Notes: generated from the sequence alone by a model not told the origin. A stretch of 64,000 nt of DNA from Fimbriosthenelais zetlandica (GCA_977030845.1 OZ365110.1:35216001-35280000); one strand, 5' to 3'; counted from the first letter of the stretch, positions 1-58,553 are shown. Made by a program: numbers and translations.

Positions 1-112
1 GTTCTTGCCATATTGTTCATTCGACCTTTTCATCAAGCCTCCCCAGGGAGCTGGAAGCATGAACTTGTAATCAGCTCTTTTTTTGTGACCCCATTGTCCG
101 GGTATGGAATAG
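1..112 (-). CDS. AKH/GnRH-like precursor gene D, coding exon 2 (runs off the window edge): (S)YSIPGQWGHKKRADYKFMLPAPWGGLMKRSNEQYGKN...
   Basis: Minus-strand acceptor ctattccatttcAG at 114-113, then an open frame to base 1. Spliced in phase 2 to exon 769-848 it gives QFSYSIPGQWGH-KKR-ADYKFMLPAPWGGLM-KR, collinear with the two-peptide layout of genes A and C. Confidence 0.88.
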
Positions 113-768
113 CTGAAATGGAATAGCGATCCTGTCAAACTATAACAAAGAACTGGCCAGCTATACTGGCCTCGCTCACTTTTTACTCCATAACAACTGC
201 ACTGCGAAGGCCGCAGTCCAGTCTGAATGTGATAAAACTCCTTATGACCTCCGAGTTGATAGGATAAAATGCGTTAGAAGGTATGTAATTCCGTGATAAA
301 AAATATCGTGAGGAGCCTCTACTGCTTTGGTGGTCAAGCCTCAAGACTCTTGGCACAGGTAGGCTGAGCCACGAATTTGGAAGGAAGTCATTGAAGCACG
401 ACTGATTTTAATTGGGGTGATTGGATGTCGAGGCAATCATAGTGGATTAGACTCGGACTTGAGTGTTTCCCTACTATTCTTAGAGCGGAAGGTGGATAGT
501 GTCGTGTATAAACGGGGTCAACACACTTGAGCTTTTCTTTTAGTTGTTTTGGGAAAACAACTGAGAAAAGCTCTCATGTGTTAACCCATAATTGACCTAG
601 CATAATATATTGTATGTCTGAAGAATTTGAGCTTCATTCGAAATAAAATAATAATGAGAAAATAATGTACAAATTGCTATATTCATGGGATAATATTTGT
701 AATTTTAACATTATAACAGAAAGAAATGGCTAATATTGAAGTCAAAGGAAAATGAAATTAAATCCCAC

Positions 769-848
769 CTGAATTGTGCGTCGGTACCTTGTAACTTGTA
801 AGCTAGGGCAATGCAGAGCACTAAAAGAACCAAAGTTGAGTTTTCCAT
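769..848 (-). CDS. AKH/GnRH-like precursor gene D, coding exon 1: signal peptide plus first residues of peptide 1 (MENSTLVLLVLCIALAYKLQGTDA|QF-)
   Basis: ATG at 848-846, hydrophobic signal-like stretch ending T-D-A before Gln. Donor AG|GTGGGA at 769/768. Upstream acceptor ttttattatttAG at 872-871. Confidence 0.85.
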
Positions 849-1019
849 TCCTTCAGCGAAACTAATGCGCCTAAATAATAAAATAGCATGTACATAATAA
901 CAAGGATACGGATGCATGTAAATACTATAATGAGTTATTAAGCCTATGCATCCCTATTTATAATTAAAACGGTATTAACCATGTAATGAATACAGAGATC
1001 TCGTTGGATTAACACTTAC

Positions 1020-1104
1020 CTAATAAACTTTGGGCACTGGATCTATATACTCACAACCTTACTTTTCATATGAACGCCCAACAAGCTGTTCGTCTTTTTA
1101 AATA
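1020..1104 (-). promoter_or_regulatory. Candidate core promoter and non-coding first exon of gene D
   Basis: TATTTAAAAA at 1104-1095 (minus) and donor G|GTAAGT at 1020/1019. Alternative donors lie at about 1034 and 1043, so the exon end is uncertain. Confidence 0.4.
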
Positions 1105-2727
1105 CCATCGAGAAGGGAACCTTTTCATAACAAAAGACATGAAGGAGAGATATACATGACTTCCCAGTGTGCATCATATAATTTTTGTGAAAAAGCCCCT
1201 CTGTATATTGTCATATTCATTCACCACCTACGCATGGGTCTTACGTCGGTGTTCTGATAAAAAATGTATGATGTCATCTCTTGTCCTCTTGAAGTCTCAG
1301 GCACCTTGATTGAAGGCGAACATGGGTCAGCCGTCTTGTAGGACCAAAAGGGGTTTAAGGAAACAGCTTGGCACACTGCTTGCTGTCCGTGGTTTGACTT
1401 CTTTTGACACTTAAAAACCCAAAGCGGCTGTAGTATTATCCCCTCATTTAATAACCATGGCCATAAGCATTGTTATACTAGGAGGGAGAAAAGTAGATTT
1501 TTTAACATAGGAATTGCCCGTGTAAAGACTAAATGTTCGAAATCCGAGTGGAATCTGCAAAAGAAATTTGTTTCATATTTTATCTTTGCCTCTGTATTTT
1601 TAACCCCTTCTTTTTTATATAGCTAGAAGTGTATTTCGATATGTGGAAATGGATATTAGAATATTCATATATTGGAGCAATTGCCTCTTTAGAGAATGAC
1701 AGATTGTGGTATTCATTTGCTTCATACCAAGAAACACCTGCATGCTGGGTGCTTTTACTATGGGCAATGCTAAGTGGGATCCAGTATAGGAAATGTATGA
1801 AATGATTCTACCTTACAAGTGCAGCAGGGGTGAAGCATCTGCAAGACAATTTGTTTTTCATCCACGTGATGAATTATGTAAAATGTGAGATTGGTACAAT
1901 AGTGGTATTTATAAGATTGATTGCTCATGTGTCAGTCATATCACATGTCTAATTATTATTCAGTGGAAGAATTGTACAAGTCTACATGTATTTCGTTCAA
2001 ATGAGACTGACACACTGTTAAACCAGAGTGGTGTCCCCTTACTATTTCTAAAGAAGATAGTGAAAAGAATGGTATTATCAAAAGTCAGTTATTTAGCTTT
2101 GTAAGGGTAAGAAATACTATATATATAGGAATAGTGTCATTTTAAGGTGTTCTATAATTACATGTAACAAGGTCTCTCTTAGGCCTATAAATCAGGAAAT
2201 ACAATCAACATATAGTATACATTATGTATAATTATCAGGATAGGAATAATCGGTTGGCAATAATCTTGTTTCACAGGCATCATTTATTTACTGCAGCTTT
2301 GGTAGTTGAAAATTGAAGAACCATTGAGTGTCCCCGTTTTAGCTAAAGCAGAATATCTGATGGAGTTCCCTGTGCTTCTTTCAAAGAGACCCAGGACTTT
2401 GAAACCGCTCTGACCAAGGGAAAATACCTCCATCCCTTTTAGGAAGGGAAGTGATCCCCTTTAATTATTCCTTACCACACTCGGTATATACATATCAGTA
2501 ATCGGGCACAAGATACGTATGCCATTGTACATTGGGCGCTCATGGCCTTCCGTAAAGGCCTCACTGATGGATTAGTAAGGATAAAAACGGACCGGAGACA
2601 TCATATGGAGGGGGACGTTTCCGTTCGCTGAGATCGGCCAGTTTTGTGAGTGATCATCATCTATAGAGCCTTGTGTAGAGGGGCATATTGAATGGCCCAG
2701 CGTCTCACAAAGTATCTTACCCTCATG

Positions 2728-2801
2728 TATATAAGGTATAGAACCCCAGCATCAGAGGCATCAGTGTCGAGGCTCAGCTGTTACCCACTACATCATAGAA
2801 G
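2728..2801 (+). promoter_or_regulatory. Candidate core promoter and non-coding first exon of gene A
   Basis: TATATAAG at 2728-2735, initiator-like TCAGT at 2761-2765, donor AAG|GTTAGT after 2801, and matching acceptor ttacttacAG at 3596-3597 upstream of the ATG. Confidence 0.55.
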
Positions 2802-3087
2802 GTTAGTCAGTCATTCTTTCTAAGATATTTCTAGTATTGAAATGGCATGAATTCCATGAATGCATAGTTTCGTTTTTTACAATCGTTTTTTTAAACTGCA
2901 TGGTGCATATATATATATATTACTAATACACATGAGGGGATTTGCACGATATATTTAGGATATTAAGCATGCTTTTGCTATAGAGTATAGCCCCTGGTAG
3001 TAATGAACAAACAAAATTAGAAATAAACTACATGTATATTTGACATATAAAGATCTATGTATCTTTTTACTGCACCAGATGGTCCAG

Positions 3088-3132
3088 TGGCCGTTTCAGC
3101 ACAACAATTTCCCATAGATTTAACATTGCTAA
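3088..3132. mobile_element. Partial copy of MITE family 1, interrupted by a family-2 end
   Basis: cag-TGGCCGTTTCAG...tttcccatagatttaacattgctaa matches the family-1 sequence, then breaks at TAA into AGCCTGG. Confidence 0.5.
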
Positions 3133-3175
3133 AGCCTGGGGAACATAGAGGCGATTCTCCAAACGATAGCGATAC
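3133..3175. mobile_element. Degenerate end of MITE family 2
   Basis: taa-AGCCTGGggaacatagaggcgattctccaaacg resembles taa-AGCCTGGaatacacccatccgattctccaatccg at 61576. Confidence 0.35.
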
Positions 3176-3632
3176 TCTATTTCTAATCACACCCAATGTA
3201 ATTTTGTCAGTGGTTAGTTAACCTTAGCTAGGTGTAAAGACTGTTAACATTACAAGCATTAGGTGTAACTGGAAATAGTATTACAATGATCGTTTGGAGA
3301 ATGTGCCCCAGGCTTAATCAGTTAATGCACAACTCACCATATGCAATCGTCAGCATTTTGGATATGACAAAAATATATATAATGTGTTTATAGAAATCAT
3401 CATGTCTATATAATTATCCATTAATTAACCGAAATAGAACTTAATTCTTGCCAAAACCTTATCAGATTCACAGCGCGGCTGTGTGGGATTCGGTATACAT
3501 GTATATTAAATAAGACTACGCTCAAATATCATGCTAGAGCAATATTACATTGGTTGCAAAAACTTTTCTTATGGAGGAATTGCCTTATTACTTACAGTGT
3601 GAAGGAGTCTAAATCTCCCTTTCTATTGCATC

Positions 3633-3854
3633 ATGAACAAGCTCTTCGTTTTCCTGCTTTTGGCCGCACTAATGGTCATCCACTGTAGCGCCAACCAATT
3701 CAGCTTCTCTCTACCCGGTAGCTGGGGTCAAACAGGCAAAAGGTCATTCAGCTTCGCCCTTCCTGGCAAGTGGGGAAATGTGAAGAGAGGAGGAAAGTTT
3801 GACTGCAGCGATCTCAATGAAGAAACGGTTCTGGCAATTTACAAATCTATCCAT
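3633..3854 (+). CDS. Akh: AKH/GnRH-like precursor gene A, coding exon 1: signal peptide, (N)QFSFSLPGSWGQT-GKR, SFSFALPGKWGNV-KR, start of Cys-containing associated peptide
   Basis: Signal peptide, Gln-initiated FSFSLPGxWG peptide with a GKR amidation/cleavage site, a second copy ending in KR, and donor CAT|GTAAGT after 3854 (74 codons, phase 0). Confidence 0.92.
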
Positions 3855-4117
3855 GTAAGTAGAATGAACTGTGCTGAAATATTGCGGCACTGTAAGACCA
3901 ATTCCCTGTGAAAGTAAACATAAATACTGTATTGCCAGAATATTTTAACATTACAAACATTGCAGGTTCTTATAGTGAACCAAAATTTTGTATCTTTTTA
4001 TTTTGCAGTGTGCTTATCTCCTATAATAAATTCGAATGTATACATGAGTTTATGTACACGTTGCTAAATCAAATATTAAATAAAGTATTATACTAAACTC
4101 CATTATTCTCGTTCCAG

Positions 4118-4189
4118 GAGGAAACAGCTCGTCTCAACTTCTGCTTCAATGAGGCAATGAAACTGGGGGAATCTACCAGCAAGCAATAA
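4118..4189 (+). CDS. Akh: Gene A coding exon 2: EETARLNFCFNEAMKLGESTSKQ*
   Basis: Acceptor ttctcgttccAG at 4116-4117. Phase-0 frame contains the ExxRLxxC motif typical of AKH/GnRH-associated peptides. Stop TAA at 4187-4189. Confidence 0.9.
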   Translation, partial: EETARLNFCFNEAMKLGESTSKQ

Positions 4190-4411
4190 CTACAACAAAG
4201 GCCATTACTTATACTGACAAAAATGCACAAATGTAAATCTGTTCATCTCGTTAATTTTGTAAACAGAAACTGAATGTTGCGAAACTCGAACGATAGAACG
4301 ATAGAATGAAGGCACAGGACGCAAGATTGGCGTCCAGACTGAACGTCTCTCCCCTTTGATTCTGTTCTAATGCAATCGATCTATCGTATATTTTATTTGT
4401 CAATATTATGA

Positions 4412-4417
4412 AATAAA
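4412..4417 (+). terminator. Candidate polyadenylation signal of gene A
   Basis: AATAAA about 220 nt after the stop; a second one lies near 4517. Motif match only. Confidence 0.35.
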
Positions 4418-4833
4418 TAGAAAACTGCGTTTGCATGTCTCCACTGTCATAACATTTATTTACTTTCAACTATTAACCCCATATATAATGCTGAATATGT
4501 AACGATAAAAGGATGCCAATAAAATTACTATGTATATATACTGGATCTTATATGACCTTTTACCTTCAGTCACACCACTGAGTATAATCGCTTGACCATT
4601 AGCCCAAATGAATGTTTTCCTGTAATAGAAAGTAATAAGCTAGCCTTGATAGGTGGAGACCCATCAGCAGAATGGGAACGTTCCTTCCCTTGTCCTTTCT
4701 GCACCCGCTGACATCCGTTCAAAACCCTAGCCTTTCTTTGCTACTATACATGGCATAAGTGTCTCTTTCCGGCTTAAATCATTGATGCAAATGACCATTT
4801 AGAGGCACATTCTAATTTCTTTGTTGAGGTCTC

Positions 4834-4908
4834 TATAAAAGGAGACTTGTGCTTGAGTTTAGAATCAATGAAGTGAGAGGTATATAACCAAGAACAAGCA
4901 AGTACAAG
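4834..4908 (+). promoter_or_regulatory. Candidate core promoter and non-coding first exon of gene B
   Basis: TATAAAAG at 4834-4841 and a weak donor AAG|GTATAC after 4908. The acceptor before ATG 5219 is not resolved. Confidence 0.4.
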
Positions 4909-5218
4909 GTATACATAGGCCTACATAAAATTTACATTCAAGGATTTTCTTCATTGGATTTCAATATCTAATTTCCTTAGGAGAATATAGGGTATAATAT
5001 ACATAATTGTCCCCTTTGTGAAGTACCCAGAAGCATGTTTCTGCATTAACAGCATTAAGTGCATTATGCACGAAACATCCTTATGCATACTATACATTAA
5101 GATCTACATGAAGGGTGTAAAAGTGATTTACAGTGGATTTGCCCCTATCACATCCAAATAATGTAATAAAATTTGCTTTTCTGGTAAGGACAGGATATAA
5201 AACAACACAATAATCGCC

Positions 5219-5404
5219 ATGAAGAATATATTCCTCTTCTTAGCAGTTATTGCCTTAGGGTTGACAACTTATGGACATCGCATCAAGTTTAAAAAGGATA
5301 GGTCCATTCTACCAGATACAGGGAAAAGTTATGAGAAAAAGTCTCATGGTCAGTGCTCAGATATTGACAGGAAAATAGTTATAGACCTTTATCTGACACT
5401 TCAG
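5219..5404 (+). CDS. Divergent AKH/GnRH-like precursor paralogue B, coding exon 1: MKNIFLFLAVIALGLTTYG|HRIKFKKDRSILPDTGKSYEKKSHGQCSDIDRKIVIDLYLTLQ
   Basis: Signal peptide. CSDID...LYLTLQ aligns with CSDLN...IYKSIH (A) and CNDLD...IYKTIQ (C). Donor CAG|GTGAGT after 5404, phase 0, at the same position as in A and C. Confidence 0.85.
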
Positions 5405-5619
5405 GTGAGTAAATTAATAAGTTGAATAATGATTAAATTGATTTGATTGGCTACATTATTTGATATACAATCGTATAATGTTTATGTATATGGATTAAGT
5501 ACAATTTCTGAAATAATGATATTACAGTGCATTATTATTGAGAATTAACCCTGAGTTGGGACAGCAGAACAAAAAGTTCACTTTTATCTATCAATTATGA
5601 TTTGTTTTGCACATCACAG

Positions 5620-5694
5620 CAAGAAGCCTGGAGGATTCAAAATTGCATGATGGATGTAACTAACTACGTGCACGAGGAAGCAGGACGTGCTTAG
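5620..5694 (+). CDS. Gene B coding exon 2: QEAWRIQNCMMDVTNYVHEEAGRA*
   Basis: Acceptor ttttgcacatcacAG at 5618-5619. QEAWRIQNC aligns with QEAVRIVSC (C) and EETARLNFC (A). Stop TAG at 5692-5694. Confidence 0.85.
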   Translation, partial: QEAWRIQNCMMDVTNYVHEEAGRA

Positions 5695-5770
5695 CATCAA
5701 ACTAAACATGGATGTATACGACTGTCAACAGAACGCGAAGAGCATACTTATTCTTACGATAAAAGAGACA

Positions 5771-5776
5771 AATAAA
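5771..5776 (+). terminator. Candidate polyadenylation signal of gene B
   Basis: AATAAA about 77 nt after the stop. Motif match only. Confidence 0.35.
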
Positions 5777-6694
5777 GGGTGTAACACTTTACAACTGAAT
5801 TATTATTAATATTTGCATTTAGTTTGAGCAGAAAAAATATTTTTACGGGAAAGTAACGTGGGTGGGTAGTGCCTATATACAATCTGTCCAAACAAGTTGA
5901 TCCGAAACTACCATACATATACATGTACATGTATTTGTACTGTGTAAGTTTGGACAGACTGTGTCGAGTTCCCTAAACATTCTTCCTCGGAATAACAAAT
6001 TGATAATAAACTCAGAATTAGACCTACCTATCTTGAGTTACAACAAATTTTAATGCTAATTAAAATTGGCACAGAAACATAAGGGCTGTTTAAATACGCA
6101 ATCAGCATCTGAATATTTCAGTGACTCTTCCTCTGCTTGGAGGCAGTTTCCAATCTGCGTTTTTATATTATATAAGATTGAAAAGTCCTATACAATCCTT
6201 TATGATGTCTATTACAACAGTTCCCCAGTAAACACCCTCTCTTGAGTGACATATGCCTCAAATGAAACATCCGCTCGTAAAGCTCACTCTTTTCGATGGC
6301 CCAGCCAGTCTCTGGCTAGGCAGGTGGATATTTCTTTGCGCATATCCGAGAAACAAACAACAAGAAAAATGGCTGACGTCCGCAAACGCTCTATAGCAAC
6401 GTCCAGTATGGTTTTGTCCGGCGGTCAACCACCTCTATGGGGCTCAGCGACCCACGTTCCTTTCTATTGTTGCGAAATCGCGAGCGGCATTTTCAGCAGA
6501 AAGGCTCAGGGAAAGACCGGACATAGAGGAAGGGAAGTTTAGGACTTTCCGGATGCTGAAGTCCTCTATTGTACCATATTGTCCACTAAGCTTCAAGTGA
6601 GGATAGGAAGTGTGGGAGCTCTGTGTTGTCATGTCACATGACGTAGGGTGTGTGACGTGTTGGACGTATGATAAGGTTGAGTTAGAGAGTGGGG

Positions 6695-6770
6695 TATATA
6701 AGAAGACCTTTCCGTTGGTCAGCTCTAAGTACAGATAAGGACAGAGAGAGAGAGGATCATCGTCAAACTG
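6695..6770 (+). promoter_or_regulatory. Candidate core promoter and non-coding first exon of gene C
   Basis: TATATAAG at 6695-6702 preceded by TGACG half-CRE motifs (about 6638-6670). Strong donor CTG|GTAAGT after 6770. Acceptor tattcctttcAG(cAG) at 7441-7445. Confidence 0.6.
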
Positions 6771-6875
6771 GTAAGTACCTTCTCTATTATTTTTTATTCA
6801 CCCTATCACTATAAGATCCACATAGGACGCATGTATACATGTAGTAGTTTTTCGCTTCATGCGGAATTGCTCCCG

Positions 6876-6942
6876 GAGCCTGTTTCAAAACAAATTTTAG
6901 CCATAGAATTAGCATTAATAATATTACCTTTGAAACAGGCCC
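6876..6942. mobile_element. MITE family 1 copy (67 bp)
   Basis: Terminal inverted repeats GAGCCTGTTTCA and TGAAACAGGCCC; interior similar to other copies. Confidence 0.65.
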
Positions 6943-6947
6943 ACCAG

Positions 6948-6995
6948 GAGCCTGTTTCAGAACAGTCATTAGCAATGCTAAGTCTATGGGAAATC
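6948..6995. mobile_element. MITE family 1, truncated copy
   Basis: cag-GAGCCTGTTTCAGaacagtcattagcaatgctaagtctatggg is nearly identical to the 10696 copy; the right TIR is missing. Confidence 0.6.
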
Positions 6996-7054
6996 AGGCG
7001 TGATGTGAAATCAAATAAGTTTCACGGCCAAATGGTGAATGGCTTACATTTCAG

Positions 7055-7372
7055 GGGCTTGTTTCAGCGGAAAAGAAATCCTATTTACTTAGCATTGCTA
7101 ATGGTTGTATAATAGTTTAAGGGTTCGACTTACTTCGTGGGTAATCTGTGAGAGGGAGTCGAGAGAATGGTACACACAGTCCAGTTCGTCCTTTGGAATC
7201 CTTGAGGGGAGCTGGGAGGGGTGTGTACATGCAAGTTTACATTCGAACGTCGACTGGTGACCTATTGTCAAACATAGGCTCATCAGGGAATCTCCCGGTC
7301 GGCCTGGGTTCCAATGACGTCACAGGGGAACCCCAGGTCAGCCGCCTATCACAGTTGTTCTGAAACAGGTCC
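7055..7372. mobile_element. MITE family 1 copy split by a 245-bp insertion
   Basis: CAG-GGGCTTGTTTCA...gttgt [7109-7353] gttgt-tc-TGAAACAGGTCC-CTG. Removing the insert and one GTTGT restores a 68-bp element. Confidence 0.65.
7109..7353. mobile_element. Unclassified 245-bp insertion flanked by a GTTGT direct repeat
   Basis: GTTGT at 7104-7108 and 7354-7358 flank GC-richer sequence that interrupts an otherwise intact MITE. Confidence 0.5.
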
Positions 7373-7467
7373 CTGGTATACGTAGGGTTCTTTGCCGTGT
7401 TTTCAAATAATGATTAAAAGTATTTCGGGTTATTCCTTTCAGCAGAGGGTTACAAGATCGAAACAAA

Positions 7468-7683
7468 ATGAATAAGGCCCTTATTATCTTGGTGGCTGCC
7501 GCCGTGCTTGCATTCCAATGCTCTCAGGCTCAGTTCTCCTTCTCCTTGCCTGGAAACTGGGGTAATGGTAAACGCGCCTTTAACTTCGCTCTGCCTGGCA
7601 GATGGGGAAATGTGAAGAGGAACAGTGTCAAGTGTAATGACCTAGACCGGGATACAGTAATGAACATCTATAAAACTATTCAG
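7468..7683 (+). CDS. Akh: AKH/GnRH-like precursor gene C, coding exon 1: signal peptide, QFSFSLPGNWGN-GKR, AFNFALPGRWGNV-KR, start of associated peptide
   Basis: Signal peptide ending S-Q-A directly before Gln, GKR site, second copy ending in KR, and donor CAG|GTATGT after 7683 (72 codons, phase 0). From memory, the predicted pQFSFSLPGNWGN-amide differs by one residue from the annelid pQFSFSLPGKWGN-amide (not database-checked). Confidence 0.93.
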
Positions 7684-7939
7684 GTATGTGTCTCCATAAT
7701 TATGTCCAGCCTATTTGACAAAAAAGAAATTCACAAATTATAATTTTCAGTTGCCTGTTTCAAAACCATAGGCTAAAGCTTTGTTATGAAACAACCCCCA
7801 GCCTATCATATCTTACTATATATACGATAAGTGCAAGGGATAGCCATTACTTAATAGGTCTAGGCCTACTTGACTCCATAAGGGAGAGTCCGCGACAAAA
7901 TATCATAACTAACATCATACATGGTCATCGATTTTTCAG

Positions 7940-8011
7940 CAAGAGGCAGTCCGGATTGTAAGCTGTTTCGGTGAGGCAGAATCGCAAGATGTGGAAAAGG
8001 ACAAACATTGA
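7940..8011 (+). CDS. Akh: Gene C coding exon 2: QEAVRIVSCFGEAESQDVEKDKH*
   Basis: Acceptor atttttcAG at 7938-7939. Gives the same C-x24-C spacing as A and B. Stop TGA at 8009-8011. Confidence 0.9.
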   Translation, partial: QEAVRIVSCFGEAESQDVEKDKH

Positions 8012-8437
8012 AAGCTTCATTTGTATTCTTTATAGTAAGTATTCCACCACTTTTGTGACATTTGAGTTCCTTCCCGTCAGATCTAATGCTTATATAAATA
8101 ATTATTTTAAAGGTCTTAGCAAGATTGGCCCAGACAGTAGCCATTTCAACGCACGTAGCAATTGAAACAGTCCCCAAGTGCACTGGATAAAGACATTCGA
8201 TTTCATTCAGTAAATTGCAAACTGCAAATCATGCTGAGCCCTATTATCACCCACTTTGACTTTATACTACTGTTCGGCCTATAGACAAAAATTCTACGCT
8301 AACAGATGTAATCCTGTTTTAATTTCAGAAAATGTTTCAAGATTGTATTGCATAGATGAAATCTCATCAGTGATATCTGCAGATCGAATCTCTTCATTTC
8401 AATGACAGTCAAGCTTACGTCAGGGTACCGTGACGTC

Positions 8438-8443
8438 AATAAA
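8438..8443 (+). terminator. Candidate polyadenylation signal of gene C
   Basis: AATAAA overlapping a TGACGTCA palindrome; another AATAAA lies near 8565. Motif match only. Confidence 0.3.
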
Positions 8444-10695
8444 GCCATGTGAGAAAGACAAGTTTTATTTTTACGTGTTCACCAACTCAAAATGACGGAT
8501 GTGAATAGCGATATAGGCCTACCAAATTCTGCCAGAATTGTTATCAATGTTTATACTTGTAGAAATAAAGGTATAGTTTTATTAAAATGAATGCCAATTA
8601 TATTCATTGCAATTGCAGTACAATTGATAGTATAAGTCTACCTGACTGTCTATCTAAGCATTATGATAACATAGTACAGGTACTTAATTCTGTTAAGTAC
8701 TGTAACTCTGCTGATCAACGCGTATCTAGCACATGGCACTGCACTAGGGCGCCCCTAGCATGGAAAACAGACAACTTTGTAGATTTAGTGTGTGTTAGTC
8801 CTACAAAAATCCACTAGATGTCACCATTATGGCAGATCATCAACCATGGCTTGTATGCCCAACGAGTATGCCAAAGCACTGCATGTCGCCTTTATATATT
8901 TATCTTAACCCTCCGTTGAAAATAATGATATTATTTGAAAGAATCTGTAACATATATTTGCATATATTTTCGAGGATTACGTAAAGTGTTGTTTATAATG
9001 ACAAAAAAATAATGACATAATGTTAAAAAAAATAGTATCCTAACTACGAAGACAGTCATAATCACGATTAAACATAATAGATCCGGAGCTGGTAGGCTAC
9101 ACCATTTAAATCCAATCTTAACTGTTCTGGAATATGTCCATAACTTCCACACAGAATGTAATAAAGACCCTTCTAATAATCCGGGTAAAGACTAAAGAAA
9201 TAAAAATGTTCGAGAATAAAATATAGGAACAGCTTTGGAAAATGAAAGATCGATTTCTTCCCATGTGGTTTGAAAAGTGGTTGTGAGTATACAAAGATAA
9301 ATTACAGTCATATCATATATGTACTTTACAACATAGGGCACATTTCTCGATATAGCCGCTGATTGACTTTAATGTACAAGGACGGTTTTCTTTAGTTCCC
9401 AAGCGATAAACAGCATTAAATAACACCCTTAAGAAGGTTGTTTATACTGCTTGTGTCAACATTTGTGAAAGTATCCTATTTTGTGGCTTATTCTATCCGT
9501 CAAATATTCACCTCACATAATCCAAAGAGTTATAACTCTCCATGACAAAGTGAACATAGAAAATCAGATTGTGTAAACAATTTATTATTGCATTTATTAA
9601 GTAAAAATTTGTTTCCTGCTGTTTAGATATAGACTTTATTCTCTTCAATTGGAAACGAAATGAAAAAAGACATAATTTCCGCCGTGTTAGGAGGTATACC
9701 TTGTTATTCTAACATCCCATTGAGGGAGCGATGCAAATCAATATACTTTGGACTATATTATTATGTATAGGCCTATATGTGACTATGAACTTACCAGTAT
9801 AGGCCTAATCTTCTCGAGGATCATTAATTTTTTTACGTCGTTCGTAATAGCTACTGATCCTTTCCACATTTAGCTCACTTTTAAAACGCATCAAACAGTT
9901 CAACTAAATGTTGTTGGCCGTATAGTTTATTTTAAATCTTTGGTCTGTCACAATTAATAGGCTCTGTCCTGACAGTAGGATGTATCGTTAAATAAAATCA
10001 ACTATTTGGACTTAAAGCCTATTATAGGAAGGCAGACCGCTCGGGACGAGGTCAAACTTGGCCGGGTAACAAGCCGGGGCCGCCGGCGAGCCCCCGGGGG
10101 CTGCTCCCACCCAGGTCCTATATGTACAGTACGTCCCTGATGTGGTGGGTGGTGGGAGGAGTGTGGTGGATGCAATAAACTTAAACTTGACATGGCAAGG
10201 TCAGGTGAGATGTGTCACAACGTCCGACTGACCATACATAGGCTATACCATGCGAAATGTACAGATCCCCTATACTGCAGGCTATATAGCCTATAGTTCT
10301 ATGCATAGGCTTATTAACAAAGTTAAAGTAAACTCAATTTACAGGATTTTCGTTTTTTCTGTGTTATCAGGGCACTTTAAACCTGGAATTATATCATTAA
10401 ATGGCTAGCCTATCTTTTGTTCATACAAATAATTTCCTTCCTTCTAAAACATGTTTGACTCTTCCATAATGGTCCTAATGGTTAATAAGGTAAACCGCAA
10501 ATAAGACTTCAAAGCTTTCTCCATTTTCACGCTTTTAGATTTAATGAACCTTGTCCTGATATCTATACCACTCATTTTCAAAAGAAGTAAAGTTAACAAG
10601 CAATGTATATCCTACATGTACACGTACATCTTCGCAAAGAGCATCCTCTTCCTCCTTTCGGCATTGCAAAAGCCCAAGTGTTTATCAGTCACCAG

Positions 10696-29745: not shown

Positions 29746-30258
29746 TCATACTACTTGAACTTGGCTCGTTTCGGTCCGCCATCTTTCCACGTGGTGCGCC
29801 GTTTTGGCGGTAGAGGGCGATGGCGATCGCGATGGCCGACTTTGTTCTATATGGTGGTGACTTTGACCTTGAAATTGAACATGGCCTTGACTACTGCTAC
29901 TGTGACCTTGACTACTGTGACCTTGACCTACATGTTGATGGTCGAGGAGGTGTTTCTGGTGTTGGAGTGATTCCATGGCCAAACTATTCCTCATCAAGTT
30001 CACCTCCTCGTCCGTGTTTGTCACACAGTCTATTTCCTCGTCTTCGTCATCTATGAGTTCCATTTCTAGCTCCTCCTCTTCCTCCTCAGCATTGGAGGAC
30101 ATGTCTAAAGGTTTGTCCTCACCGTCAGACCTGACAGAGCCGCCATCTGGTGAGCCGGGATCTTTACTATGTCCACTGCCATCTCCTCTCTGGTTCTCCG
30201 CTTCTTCAGCTTTCATCCGCTTGTATTTGGTACGTCGGTTCTGGAACCATACTTTAAC
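29746..30258 (-). CDS. Emx: Emx homeobox gene, coding exon 3 (homeodomain helix 3 VKVWFQNRRTKYKR, acidic and His/Ser-rich C-terminus)
   Basis: Acceptor gtatttttcAG at 30260-30259, phase 0. VKVWFQNRRTKYKR continues exon 2. Contains the Emx-type HHVERWR motif. Stop TGA at 29748-29746. Confidence 0.95.
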   Translation of the reverse strand, partial: VKVWFQNRRTKYKRMKAEEAENQRGDGSGHSKDPGSPDGGSVRSDGEDKPLDMSSNAEEEEEELEMELIDDEDEEIDCVTNTDEEVNLMRNSLAMESLQHQKHLLDHQHVGQGHSSQGHSSSSQGHVQFQGQSHHHIEQSRPSRSPSPSTAKTAHHVERWRTETSQVQVV

Positions 30259-55000: not shown

Positions 55001-56934
55001 CTCGGCTGAAAATGAATCCGGGCTGAATTATGTTGCATGCCTGTCATATTTACCCGGCTATAATTGAGGGTGGGAGGCGCTATGGACCGAAAATCCAGGT
55101 GAATGGAGCTGGGATCGATGCAAGTGCTGCGACTATTTAGCACACCCCGATGGCGCTGGAGATGTTAAACACCTTAATTTTGTCCCTCTGCTTGAGTCAA
55201 CCATGCCAGCCTTTCACTGCCGTGGAAAGGTAACATTAAATGCATATATAAAGATGTGGTAGCGTAGGGGAATTGAATAGAAAGCCAGGGTTAGCCCTGT
55301 ATACAGCTCAGGCAGTGTTAGCATTTGCCGAGGTGAGCTCGATTCCTTTACCCGACCCCAGATCGTTGTATACGGTTCGTGTAGAGCATTGAAGCGGGTT
55401 CCCTCTTTTACTGATAACATCAGTACCGACAAAATGGGGAGTGAGCTGGGGACCACCTAGACGCTCATATTCAAGTCAGCGTTAGACATTTCACAACAAA
55501 TTACTCAGCCCTCTGTGTGAAAATTTGCCTGTCATTTGAAATAAAAACCCCATGGTAAAGTATAAGCCATATTTATGGGGTGAACAAGTATAAACGATGC
55601 GTTTAGAGTATAGGTTCCCTCTCAACTAAACCTAAGCCGATTTTGGAGGCATCTATATATGATAATTTTCTCGACTCTACAACCACAAAGAGTCTATCAA
55701 AACATAAAGATATGACCACACAAATGGTAAAAACACAGCCGATTACTGGATTCTGCGATATAGTAATGAATTACAATTGGGATAAAAGGCCTTTGGCTTT
55801 GGGATGCCTTTAACTACAATTTGGATCTGACGAGATAAAAAGTGGTGCTCTCCAATGTGACTCTAAACTCGTTGCTCTAAATGCAGATGCACCACGACCA
55901 CCCTGCTTCATATCTATCTACAATATTAATTGTGTATACTTCTGTGGCAACATTGTGATAAAATCACGGAAGAACGTGAAAAATGTCATTGAAAATACAG
56001 TGGTGTCTAATGGGGATAGATGGGAGTTTTATCAGATTCGTCCCATGCAAAGTAAAACTTTAAGAAGGGAATCTAGTTCCTTCTTGTGTTCTTTTAATTC
56101 ATAAAATGATCAAACATTTCCAGCCATGCTTGTAAGCAAGGTATATATAGGGACAGGGATGCAATCACCTTTTACAGGATAAATTGCTTGAATTTTCAGC
56201 GTTGGTCTTTAAGATTGCCATGCCCTCCTCATCCAAGGTGAAACTGAGCATTCGGCAGTATCCGTTTGATTCCAACGTTCTATAGAATCCCGGATTCTTA
56301 GAAGTGATAACCTAACGTTCAGTGCTTCATAAGCTATAGGATTTGGTCACGGGGCGTTTACTGTCATGATGACCATGCATGTATGATGTCTTATGACGAT
56401 TCAGGGATCTGTTCTCAGAAGTCAAGTCTTACGAGTCATTGTAAGGAAAACAATCTTAGTATCCAAAGACATAGATCTAGGTCTATTATACTTGGCAGAT
56501 CTGGGATTTCAAGTCATCCAATAAAGCTTGATTTCAGTTTAATTGGAGCAGCACGAAAAGTTCTTTCAATATAATATCTTTAGTATATCTAATTGTCAAT
56601 CAATATATGAGGTGCATACTCTAAAATGAATTTCGATTGGGGTGTGAACATAGTGCAAGTGCGTGAAGTTCAAATTTACCTTAGAATCTACATCCAATCA
56701 CACAATAATAATTATGAAGAATGTATCCAGCACTATGGCACTACAGATATAAATCTGATGTTCCCGGTCTTGCTCCAAGATATTTTGCCTATTCATTCTG
56801 TGCTTTCAATAACATTGAAAAATACTCTTAGAATAATTATTTTAGTTTGACTTCTAAATTACATGCCTATAAATTGTGTTAAGAATTATTTACACACAAG
56901 TGTAGATAAGATATGTGAAGCTTTCCATACATAC

Positions 56935-57487
56935 CTGGAAATCGTCCATGACTAAAGTAGCCCCCGTGTCTGGACATTAACCATGGGTAGAGACTAAAAT
57001 GTTCCCTGTGACCAGTAGCTGCCCCTAACAACATAGGATGAGCGGCGCCCAGTCCGGGATGGCCGGGAGTGAATCCGGCGGGAAGTCCATGAGGACTAGC
57101 CGCCATGGGTATTGGGAAACCTAGCGCCGCGGCGGCCGTCAAACTGTCAGGATACGCGGTATGTTCACTAGGCCCACAGTTGTACAAACCTTTCATACTG
57201 TTCAATAATAAAGGATTGTTATGGAGAGGATGGAAGCCGGTATTGTGAGGGTGGCCGAAAAGCACTCCTTCCCGGTTGGGCACTGTAGCAGCCTCGGCTG
57301 AAGCGGTGAGGTTGATCGGCGTGGTCGAGGAGTTACTCCTGGGGCTCGGGTCTGGGGAGGAGGTGGAGGGCGGGCGTAAGCGGGACGCTGGTGGAGAGCG
57401 AGACCGGGAACGCGGTCGGTCCTTCGACATGAGCGAGTCAATGGTAAATCCATGGGAGCGTTTGGCAGTCGGCACCACCGGCATCAT
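56935..57487 (-). CDS. Emx: Emx homeobox gene, coding exon 1 (eh1 motif FTIDSLM; YPW hexapeptide-like motif; ends ...GRFP-G)
   Basis: accATGATG start. MMPVVPTAKRSHGFTIDSLMSKD resembles the Emx N-terminus (KRxFTIESL). LYPWL...RFPG precedes donor CAG|GTATGT at 56935/56934 (phase 1, compatible with exon 2). The joined CDS is 1236 nt, 411 aa. Confidence 0.93.
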
Positions 57488-58553
57488 GGTAGAGGCTGCT
57501 AGCTTGACTTCCAAGACAATTGGGAGACGCTCCTGTGTGAAGCGCAGATGAGTTCTTATAAGGAGTAGCTCAAGTTTTGTCCAGAGCAGCTCCTTAAAGG
57601 TCCATGCAGTCTATCAAAGCAATCCCTGAACAAATAACAAGTCACTGCTCAATGCACAGTGCACTATATTTATTCTTCATATCGTGTTTTAAATGAATCA
57701 ATAATTGATAATCAGCTCCAACACAAATCATCCCTCATAAAATGCACATTTAATTATATCGCTAGTATGAGTCATTTAAGTTAAAACACCACAAGGTATA
57801 GGTCAATGAAACTGCTGGTGCCACTTATTGTCCTCGAGTGAATTGAGTAAAAGTTTTATCAAGTGTCCATTGATAATTTATACCTTTGAAATGCTATACA
57901 GCAAGTGTATTTGTGCAGTCCAAAGTTGAAGAGGAATCCTTTATAGTTTATCCACTAATGGTACCTTTAAATCCGTGAGGGTAGAAAGTCTTGGAGAGAC
58001 TTATGTATAGCAGTGATAAAGGTGGAACTTTTGTCAGTCTATGTAGAATGTGGATATGTCACTCCAGTGTCTCAGTGCATCCTCTCTACCACATTTTAGG
58101 TCATGTGAGGGTATGTAGCGATGTCTGAACCTCCTGGGGATCAGATCTGCAGCATGATACACTATCTAGTTATTATATAGCTCAGGGCATCCAAGCTTGA
58201 TATGAATGTGTTGCTGGTGCTCTCAGAGAGTGTGTGTGAGTGAATATGCGTGTGTGACAACGCAGCTCGCGTCTTTCCAACAACTGGTGTCAGTCACTGT
58301 TCACTGCTGTGGCCTATTCCTCCACGCTTCTCTACACTGCCACTATAGTCTCTCCGCTCTCTCTCCCCTCTCTCTCCCTTCTATGCATCCACCTCTCATC
58401 ACACACTCATAAAGTCTGTATGCTTCACCCAAGTGGCCTCTGTCCAAACCAACTCCTTTCAGACTGAAAATACCTGGATCCTTCTGCTTCTGCAGGAGTG
58501 ACGCTCTCTCGGTTTAAGACTCAGAGATCAGCCCTGTTTGGGATCCAGATTCA

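What the first reader, a model, noticed from the sequence alone, without database searches (positions are those of the whole stretch)
1..8011. Tandem cluster of four diversified AKH/GnRH-type neuropeptide precursor genes
Seen: four small spliced genes within 8 kb (D on minus; A, B, C on plus). A, B and C share the same phase-0 intron and a C-x24-C associated peptide. A, C and D each carry two related FxxP(G/A)xWG-type peptides. Predicted products are QFSFSLPGSWGQT-amide (A), QFSFSLPGNWGN-amide (C), QFSYSIPGQWGH (D), three second-copy peptides, and the divergent B products. Known: AKH/ACP/corazonin/GnRH form one superfamily, and AKH-type genes are usually present in low copy. Inference: this is a local expansion that varies sequence, length and end-modifications, possibly a multi-ligand signalling system for one or several GnRH/AKH-type receptors. 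Novelty for this species is unverified.
Basis: partly seen in the sequence, partly recalled or inferred. Interest (0 to 1): 0.85.

Follow-up and report, generated by a model that had tools for sequence, protein, structure and literature searches.

The report
Conserved four-gene GnRH/AKH-like hormone cluster
Four neighbouring genes for small secreted hormone precursors of the known annelid "AKH1/GnRH type 1" family are really there; a distant relative also has four such genes in a row, so this is an old family expansion, and one copy has lost its hormone but kept the rest of the precursor.

Summary
Window 1-8011 carries four small spliced precursor genes: D on minus, A, B and C on plus. All have open frames, GT-AG introns, signal peptides and TATA boxes, and A-C have poly(A) signals. 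The peptide motif occurs nowhere else in the 64 kb.

They belong to a described family, the annelid "proto-AKH-1 / GnRH type 1 / GnRHL3" preprohormones. Capitella GnRH-2 already shows the two-peptide layout, the C-x24-C associated peptide and the phase-0 intron.

It is not a recent local expansion. Synonymous sites between paralogues are saturated. A distant relative (one ENA contig) has four family genes in the same orientation pattern, including a clear D orthologue with the identical phase-2 intron inside the mature peptide. A third species shows the divergent D-like/A-like pair.

C, D and A are under purifying selection (pN far below pS). B keeps only the associated peptide (30.5 bits to a family profile), and I found no orthologue. 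Whether B is functional or decaying is open.

No RNA runs could be listed, so no transcript was checked. I found no paper describing such a cluster. The scan's other notes on this same stretch say the same things. Verdict: real, a new variant of a known kind, moderate interest.

The parts
1..112 (-). Gene D, second coding exon (continues beyond the left edge). It encodes ..YSIPGQWGH-KKR-ADYKFMLPAPWGGLM-KR-SNEQYGKN..
   Evidence: Acceptor AG at 114-113. The joined frame rebuilds QFSYSIPGQWGH. The sp2 orthologue has its acceptor at the same codon position.
113..768 (-). Gene D, 656-nt phase-2 intron that splits the Ser3 codon of the mature peptide
   Evidence: GT at 768-767 and AG at 114-113. 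The same place and phase are seen in sp2 D' (AG|T versus AG|C), after an 80-nt exon in both.
769..870 (-). Gene D, first coding exon. ATG at 848; MENSTLVLLVLCIALAYKLQGTDA | QF(S). The acceptor at about 872-871 is inferred.
   Evidence: 68% identical over 25 residues to the sp2 D' signal peptide MQNTTLLLLVLGVVLAYRLQGADAQ.
1020..1104 (-). Gene D, inferred promoter (TATTTAAAA at 1104) and short non-coding first exon ending at the donor G|GTAAGT (1020|1019)
   Evidence: Sequence signals only. No RNA.
2728..2801 (+). Gene A, TATATAAG box and inferred non-coding exon of about 45 nt, donor AAG|GTTAGT at 2802
   Evidence: The TATA-to-donor spacing is 74 nt, against 75 in B and 76 in C.
3598..3854 (+). 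Gene A, coding exon 1 (ATG 3633). Signal peptide, (N)QFSFSLPGSWGQT-GKR, SFSFALPGKWGNV-KR, then the first half of the associated peptide.
   Evidence: phmmer against Capitella GnRH-2 gives 61 bits.
4118..4189 (+). Gene A, last coding exon (EETARLNFC..., stop at 4187-4189). AATAAA at 4412.
4834..4908 (+). Gene B, TATAAAAG box and inferred non-coding exon, donor AAG|GTATAC at 4909
   Evidence: The acceptor before the ATG is uncertain (exon start 5134 or 5194).
5219..5404 (+). Gene B, coding exon 1. Signal peptide MKNIFLFLAVIALGLTTYG, then HRIKF-KK-DRSILPDTGKSYE-KK-SHGQC.. There is no AKH/GnRH motif.
   Evidence: Only LP and the dibasic sites align to the second-copy peptide of C.
5620..5694 (+). 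Gene B, last coding exon (QEAWRIQNC...). AATAAA at 5771.
   Evidence: A family HMM built without B matches B residues 37-80 at 30.5 bits.
6695..6770 (+). Gene C, TATATAAG box and inferred non-coding exon, donor CTG|GTAAGT at 6771
   Evidence: Similar TATA-plus-donor pairs lie upstream of sp1 C, sp2 C' and sp2 E'.
7443..7683 (+). Gene C, coding exon 1 (ATG 7468). Signal peptide, QFSFSLPGNWGN-GKR, AFNFALPGRWGNV-KR, then the first half of the associated peptide.
   Evidence: 94% identical to P0001 of a related species. pN 0.04 against pS 0.75.
7940..8011 (+). Gene C, last coding exon (QEAVRIVSC...KH, stop at 8009-8011). First AATAAA at 8438.

Best explanation
This is an old, conserved tandem cluster of four preprohormone genes of the annelid-type 'GnRH type 1' family. 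The family has also been called AKH1, proto-AKH-1 and GnRHL3, and Capitella GnRH-2 belongs to it.

Each gene has a TATA promoter, a short non-coding exon and a coding exon for the signal peptide plus peptides. A phase-0 intron follows, then a last exon that completes a two-cysteine (C-x24-C) associated peptide. D has one extra phase-2 intron inside its first peptide.

Processing is inferred from the standard route. Signal peptidase cuts first, then prohormone convertases cut at KR/KKR and carboxypeptidase trims the basic residues. Amidation happens where a Gly precedes the basic pair, and an N-terminal Gln is cyclised.

This gives the following predicted products:
- C: pQFSFSLPGNWGN-amide and AFNFALPGRWGNV.
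- A: (N)QFSFSLPGSWGQT-amide and SFSFALPGKWGNV.
- D: pQFSYSIPGQWGH and ADYKFMLPAPWGGLM, probably with more beyond the window edge.

B has lost the first peptide, and its second is degenerate. It keeps an intact signal peptide, splice sites, promoter and poly(A) signals, and the associated peptide. It most likely still encodes a secreted protein whose conserved part is that associated peptide.

The peptides presumably act on GnRH/corazonin-superfamily GPCRs, as the Platynereis homologue does weakly. That step is inferred, not shown.
For: Gene models.
Motif confined to 1-8011.

Family identity: the exact core QFSFSLPG is published for Capitella GnRH-2 and Platynereis proto-AKH-1. The Capitella precursor has the same two-peptide layout and C-x24-C. 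phmmer of A, C and D against these gives 42-82 bits. Both published precursors pass Pfam PF06377.

Wide family: an exhaustive profile search gave 33 hits, many with two or three peptide copies.

Conservation: the C orthologue in sp1 has both exons and splice sites kept, with pN 0.04 against pS 0.75. The sp2 contig has D', E', A' and C' in the pattern D<- ->x ->x ->C. In sp3 a D-like ORF lies 5 kb from an A-like ORF on the opposite strand.

Trees and selection: the C clade is starred (99/96 and 96/90) and D+D' gets 99/96 and 94/97. pN is far below pS for C, D and A.

Second-copy peptides: FSFALPGKWGNVKR is identical in the window, sp2 and sp3. FNFALPGRWGNVKR is identical in the window, sp1 and sp2.

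B: the family HMM hits only its associated peptide, at 30.5 bits. Its TATA-to-donor spacing of 75 nt matches 74 in A and 76 in C.
Against: No transcript evidence: no RNA or DNA run could be listed. The non-coding first exons and all splice junctions therefore rest on sequence signals and cross-species conservation.

B has no detected orthologue. Its pN against any relative is high, 0.48-0.58, so selection on it is not demonstrated.

The 3' part of D lies outside the window.

Orthology of the middle genes (A, B against E', A') is unresolved. The AU tests reject nothing.

Pfam PF06377 on C exon 1 alone is below threshold: 14.7 against 22.9 bits.

Receptor pairing is unknown even in Platynereis.
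Confidence: 0.8

Rival explanations
1. B is a decaying duplicate, that is, a non-functional or nearly non-functional pseudogene-in-waiting. The cluster then has three working genes.
For: B has lost the first peptide entirely and has no Trp or Gly-amide signal in the remnant of the second. No orthologue was found in the protein databases or in 68 kb of the sp2 cluster. It has the longest branch in every tree. Its pN is 0.48-0.58.
Against: The duplicate is old: pS against A and C is 0.83-0.86, which is saturated. Even so, 86 codons across two exons stay open. The consensus GTGAGT donor, the acceptor, the hydrophobic signal peptide with a good cleavage site, both cysteines at exactly 24 residues, a consensus TATAAAAG box at the family's spacing and an AATAAA 77 nt after the stop all survive. 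The associated-peptide part still scores 30.5 bits to the family profile.
Confidence: 0.35
2. The cluster is a recent, species-specific local expansion.
For: The genes lie within 8 kb, and A, B and C share one exon-intron plan.
Against: Synonymous sites between paralogues are saturated. The D and C lineages each have orthologues in a species that is itself saturated at synonymous sites against the window. A four-gene cluster with the same orientation pattern exists there.
Confidence: 0.04
3. Only the first, N-terminal peptide of each precursor is a hormone. The second-copy peptides (no pGlu, no amide) are spacer remnants of an internal duplication.
For: They lack both protective end modifications typical of the family. 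In Platynereis the corresponding stretch has decayed to AALGWG.
Against: FSFALPGKWGNV-KR and FNFALPGRWGNV-KR are invariant across three species each, while flanking linker and signal-peptide residues change. Dibasic sites flank them on both sides. Capitella's second copy is amidated.
Confidence: 0.2

Closest known systems
Capitella teleta GnRH-2 preprohormone (with GnRH-2a); Veenstra 2011, sequence in the supplement of Li et al. 2016, PMC5024129
   Same: A signal peptide is followed directly by QFSFSLPGxWGN-GKR. A second FxFxLPGxWG copy ends in a dibasic site. The associated peptide is C-x24-C, with a phase-0 intron after ..IQ. Window C scores 82 bits against it.
   Different: Capitella's second copy is amidated (..WGAQ-GKR), whereas here it ends ..WGNV-KR without Gly. 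The two Capitella genes of this type are listed from different WGS contigs. Here four genes sit within 8 kb.
Platynereis dumerilii AKH1 = GnRH1 = GnRHL3 (Conzelmann 2013; Andreatta 2020, PMC6969523; Thiel 2021, PMC8557429)
   Same: The same first peptide, with one substitution (K9 to N in C). The same cysteine spacing and the same precursor plan.
   Different: Platynereis has one gene of this type with a decayed second copy. Its peptide activates the corazonin receptors only at high concentration, and no dedicated receptor is known.
Arthropod and mollusc AKH sensu stricto (Pfam PF06377)
   Same: pGlu start, an aromatic residue at position 2, FS at positions 4-5, a W-G-x-amide end and a cysteine-bearing precursor-related peptide.
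   Different: The peptides here are 12-13 residues with Trp at position 10, not 8-10 residues with Trp at position 8. Li et al. 2016 therefore call the annelid peptides 'proto-AKH'.

Membership tests
Annelid/trochozoan GnRH type 1 ('proto-AKH-1', AKH1, GnRHL3) preprohormones | A signal peptide is followed directly by Gln and the core [F/I]S[F/Y]S[L/I]PGxWG | tested here: met
   Met by C and D. A is met except for an extra Asn before Gln. B is not met: the motif is absent.
Annelid/trochozoan GnRH type 1 ('proto-AKH-1', AKH1, GnRHL3) preprohormones | A Gly amidation donor plus a dibasic site after the first peptide | tested here: inconclusive
   Met by A (..QT-GKR) and C (..GN-GKR). Not met by D (..GH-KKR), and D' in sp2 also lacks Gly (..GH-KR). 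Not applicable to B.
Annelid/trochozoan GnRH type 1 ('proto-AKH-1', AKH1, GnRHL3) preprohormones | An associated peptide with two cysteines 24 residues apart, split by a phase-0 intron 16 residues after the first Cys | tested here: met
   A, B and C meet it, as do the published Capitella and Platynereis precursors. This part of D lies off the window. The sp2 D' has the first Cys and the intron at the expected place.
Annelid/trochozoan GnRH type 1 ('proto-AKH-1', AKH1, GnRHL3) preprohormones | Significant sequence similarity to described members | tested here: met
   phmmer against Capitella GnRH-2 and Platynereis AKH1: A 61/43 bits, C 82/67, D 50/42. B scores 20 bits against Platynereis, and 30.5 bits against a family HMM, over the associated peptide only.
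Pfam PF06377 Adipokin_hormo | Score at or above the gathering threshold (22.9 bits) | tested here: inconclusive
   C exon 1 alone scores 14.7 bits. A, B and D exon fragments give no hit. Full-length Capitella GnRH-2 (27.2 bits) and Platynereis AKH1 (23.9 bits) pass. The spliced window proteins were not submitted, because they have no reference form.
AKH sensu stricto (arthropod/mollusc) | Mature peptide of 8-10 residues with Trp at position 8 | tested here: not met
   The predicted peptides are 12-13 residues with Trp at position 10. The criterion is as stated in PMC5024129.
GnRH/AKH/corazonin ligand superfamily | Activation of a GnRH/AKH/CRZ-type GPCR | not testable with these tools
   This needs synthetic peptides and receptor assays. 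In Platynereis the homologous peptide activates CrzR only at high concentration.

The most novel reading that the evidence does not exclude
B is a transcribed, selected gene whose only conserved product is the disulfide-bearing associated peptide. This would show that the GnRH/AKH 'associated peptide', so far without a proven role in invertebrates, is a signalling molecule in its own right. In parallel, the invariant unmodified second-copy peptides and the non-amidated D peptide would be ligands of a receptor other than the known GnRH and corazonin receptors. That would answer the open question of the missing receptor for GnRHL3-type peptides.
Probability: 0.2. Interest if true: 0.65.

Novelty: new variant of a known kind. 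Interest (0 to 1): 0.4.

Why it matters
The peptide family is known, but its biology is unsettled. In Platynereis the single peptide of this type has no high-affinity receptor.

This lineage has kept four diversified genes side by side over a long time. They include strictly conserved peptides with neither pyroglutamate nor amide, a peptide split by an intron, and a copy reduced to the associated peptide. Together they offer a natural series of ligands for finding that receptor, and for asking whether the associated peptide has a function of its own.

It also shows that precursors with two or three copies of the peptide are widespread in this family, not a Capitella oddity.

Tried and rejected
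RNA support: the look-up of sequencing runs on 1-8100 (rna) and on gene A (any) listed nothing, so read laying was never usable.

Word-indexed protein searches: the searches with A exon 1 and B exon 1 found no candidate. The search with C exon 1 found only P0001.

Literature: a full-text search for the six exact peptide cores of this window found no paper. A search for annelid GnRH tandem clusters found none.

ESM Atlas look-up of B exon 1: best score 0.76, only bacterial and viral hypothetical clusters, so uninformative.

Promoter conservation: blastn-short between paralogues and against relatives found nothing beyond the TATA box.

B orthologue in sp2: tblastn, regular expressions for exon ends and ORF listing between A' and C' and across the whole 68 kb found none.

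Orthology of A and B: the trees left them unresolved, and seven AU tests rejected nothing. I therefore do not claim A=A', A=E' or B=A'.

Contigs of P0004 and P0007 were too short to show neighbours, and P0009 was not on record. The sp3 contig's DNA could not be fetched.

Species identity was not established. 'Annelid' rests on the family's closest published members and on an earlier unchecked note. Thiel 2021 reports near-identical peptides in a nemertean and two brachiopods as well.
Full report
**What is in the sequence**

Reading 1-9000 and listing ORFs gives three plus-strand genes with the same plan.
- A: CDS 3633-3854 and 4118-4189, 97 aa.
- B: CDS 5219-5404 and 5620-5694, 86 aa.
- C: CDS 7468-7683 and 7940-8011, 95 aa.

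All three have GT-AG introns in phase 0 after ..I[QH] or ..LQ.

D lies on the minus strand. An 80-nt exon (848-769) encodes MENSTLVLLVLCIALAYKLQGTDA-QF plus two bases of a Ser codon. A 656-nt intron follows. Exon 112-1 continues ..YSIPGQWGH-KKR-ADYKFMLPAPWGGLM-KR-SNEQYGKN and runs off the window.

A six-frame scan finds P[GA]xWG six times in 1-8011 and nowhere else in the 64 kb.

Each gene has a purine at -3 of its ATG. Each plus-strand gene has a consensus TATA box followed 74, 75 and 76 nt later by a splice donor (A 2728/2802, B 4834/4909, C 6695/6771). An AATAAA lies 223, 77 and 427 nt after the stop. This points to a short non-coding first exon in all three.

D has a comparable TATTTAAAA (1104) and a donor at 1020|1019. 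These 5' exons are inferred from signals only.

**Which family**

The core QFSFSLPG is published. Li et al. 2016 (PMC5024129) list pQFSFSLPGKWGNamide for Capitella GnRH-2 and Platynereis proto-AKH-1.

Their supplement gives the Capitella precursor. It has two peptide copies (QFSFSLPGKWGN.., AFSFSLPGRWGAQ-GKR) and a cysteine pair 24 residues apart.

Thiel et al. 2021 (PMC8557429) call this lineage trochozoan GnRH type 1. They note duplications in some annelids.

phmmer of the spliced window proteins against Capitella GnRH-2 and Platynereis AKH1 gives 61/43 bits for A, 82/67 for C and 50/42 for D. The two published precursors pass Pfam PF06377. C exon 1 alone scores 14.7 bits, below the 22.9-bit threshold.

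**Relatives and synteny**

A profile of A and C exon 1 plus P0001 was searched against 1.84 billion representatives. It gave 33 hits at E<=0.001. Most are exon-1 ORFs from genome or metagenome assemblies. Several carry two or three peptide copies.

Three sources are close to the window.
- sp1 (Logan ERR14368245, L001) has a C orthologue with both exons. It is 94% identical over exon 1 (92% over all 95 codons), with 80% nucleotide identity in exon 1 and no detectable similarity in intron or flanks.
- sp2 (ENA ERZ25767047, one 3.6-Mb contig) was walked over record positions 2,599,779-2,667,519.
- sp3 (ERZ26222911) gave no DNA.

The sp2 contig holds four family genes.
- D' sits on one strand. Its signal-peptide exon is 80 nt long, as in the window. 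It ends ..DAQI+AG|GT, and its next exon starts T TTC TCG.... This is the same phase-2 intron in the same Ser codon.
- E', A' (P0003) and C' sit on the other strand.

The pattern D'<- ->E' ->A' ->C' mirrors D<- ->A ->B ->C here, but it spreads over about 50 kb instead of 8 kb.

In sp3, a three-peptide D-like ORF without a signal peptide (P0008) lies 5 kb from an A-like ORF (P0002) on the opposite strand. A further 91-aa ORF lies 4.4 kb downstream of P0002.

**Age and selection**

Between paralogues in the window, pS is 0.83-0.86, which is saturated.

| Comparison | pN | pS |
|---|---|---|
| C vs sp1 C | 0.04 | 0.75 |
| C vs sp2 C' | 0.14 | 0.68 |
| D vs sp2 D' | 0.26 | 0.95 |
| A vs sp2 A' or E' | 0.27-0.34 | about 0.75 |

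C, D and A are therefore under purifying selection, and the cluster predates the split from a distant relative.

Trees give a starred C clade (99/96 and 96/90) and D+D' support of 99/96 and 94/97. The places of A, A', E', P0002 and B are unresolved, and the AU tests reject no grouping.

By position, A would pair with E' and B with A'. By the second-copy peptide (SFSFALPGKWGNV), A resembles A'. I leave this open.

**The peptides**

First peptides:
- C gives pQFSFSLPGNWGN-amide, one substitution from the published peptide.
- A gives QFSFSLPGSWGQT-amide. An Asn sits where relatives have the -1 Ala of the signal peptide (..HCSA-N-Q.. against ..CADA-Q..). The N-terminus may therefore be NQ.. without pyroglutamate.
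- D gives pQFSYSIPGQWGH without an amidation Gly. D' also ends ..WGH-KR.

The second-copy peptides have neither an N-terminal Gln nor a Gly. Even so, FSFALPGKWGNV-KR is identical in the window, sp2 and sp3. FNFALPGRWGNV-KR is identical in the window, sp1 and sp2, while linkers and signal peptides vary. That argues they are products, not spacers.

D' has three copies, so D probably continues beyond the window.

**B**

B aligns to the family only from residue 37 on. A family HMM built without B scores 30.5 bits over the associated peptide and nothing over the hormone region. Of the second copy, only ..LP.. and the dibasic sites remain. Its C-to-C loop is closest to C's, at 14 of 26 positions.

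No orthologue was found anywhere.

Against simple decay: the duplicate is old, yet the frame, the splice consensus, the signal peptide, the exact cysteine spacing, the TATA box at the family's spacing and the poly(A) signal are all intact.

I rate a functional B at about 0.6 and a decaying copy at about 0.35. Only RNA or closer relatives can decide.

**Mechanism**

- Shown: gene structures, family membership, conservation and constraint.
- Inferred from established prohormone processing: cleavage at KR/KKR, amidation at Gly and pyroglutamate at Gln.
- Inferred from Platynereis (PMC6969523): neuronal expression, and action on GnRH/corazonin-superfamily GPCRs. There the homologous peptide activates the corazonin receptors only at high concentration, and its own receptor is still missing.

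**Novelty**

I found no paper with these peptide sequences and none describing a tandem cluster of this family in annelids.

Duplicates of this type (Capitella GnRH-2 and GnRH-3) and two-copy precursors are known. The new points are three: the conserved four-gene cluster, the D lineage (an intron inside the peptide, no amide, two to three copies), and the hormone-less B.

This is a new variant of a known kind.

The scan's other notes on this same stretch (D's intron, B's loss, the unmodified second copy, the Emx linkage) say the same things. They come from the same readers and are not independent.

**Limits**

- No transcript data could be obtained.
- The 3' part of D is outside the window.
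- The species is not identified.

Noticed in passing
window 29746-57514, minus strand: An Emx-type homeobox gene lies next to the cluster. One ORF (56879-57514) has an eh1-like FTIDSLM motif and ..LYPWLMSRHGGYF... A last exon encodes ..QVKVWFQNRRTKYKRMKAEE.. (homeodomain helix 3 at 30232-30249, continuing into ORF 29746-30216). Its 3' end is about 21.7 kb from the stop codon of gene C.
   Followed up: partly
L006 995-1650 (= L009 10126-10639, minus): In the relative sp2, the last exon of the paralogue E' (EEAARITYCVSEMKEEKH*) is present three times. At least the first two copies lie in a 176-bp tandem repeat. Each copy has its own polypyrimidine tract and AG acceptor. The first copy has diverged (EEVACITDCVLEMKEEKH*).
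   Followed up: partly
window 6872-7377, 7748-7766, 10695, 26810, 33904: A dispersed short repeat with the end motif GGAGCCTGTTTCARAAC has 7 matches against 0.02 expected. Inverted copies at 6943-6964 and 7356-7377 bracket about 430 bp, which looks MITE-like. Four copies sit in the two introns of gene C.
   Followed up: partly
window 6630-6670: Two TGACGT (CRE-like half-site) motifs lie 30-65 nt upstream of gene C's TATA box. No equivalent was looked for systematically in A, B, D or the orthologues.
   Followed up: no
Proteins P0007, P0012, P0024 and sp2 A' (P0003): Several family members from different species start the first peptide with Lys instead of Gln (..EA|KFSFSLPG.., ..DA|KFSFALPG..). 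Loss of the pyroglutamate start has therefore happened more than once in this family.
   Followed up: no
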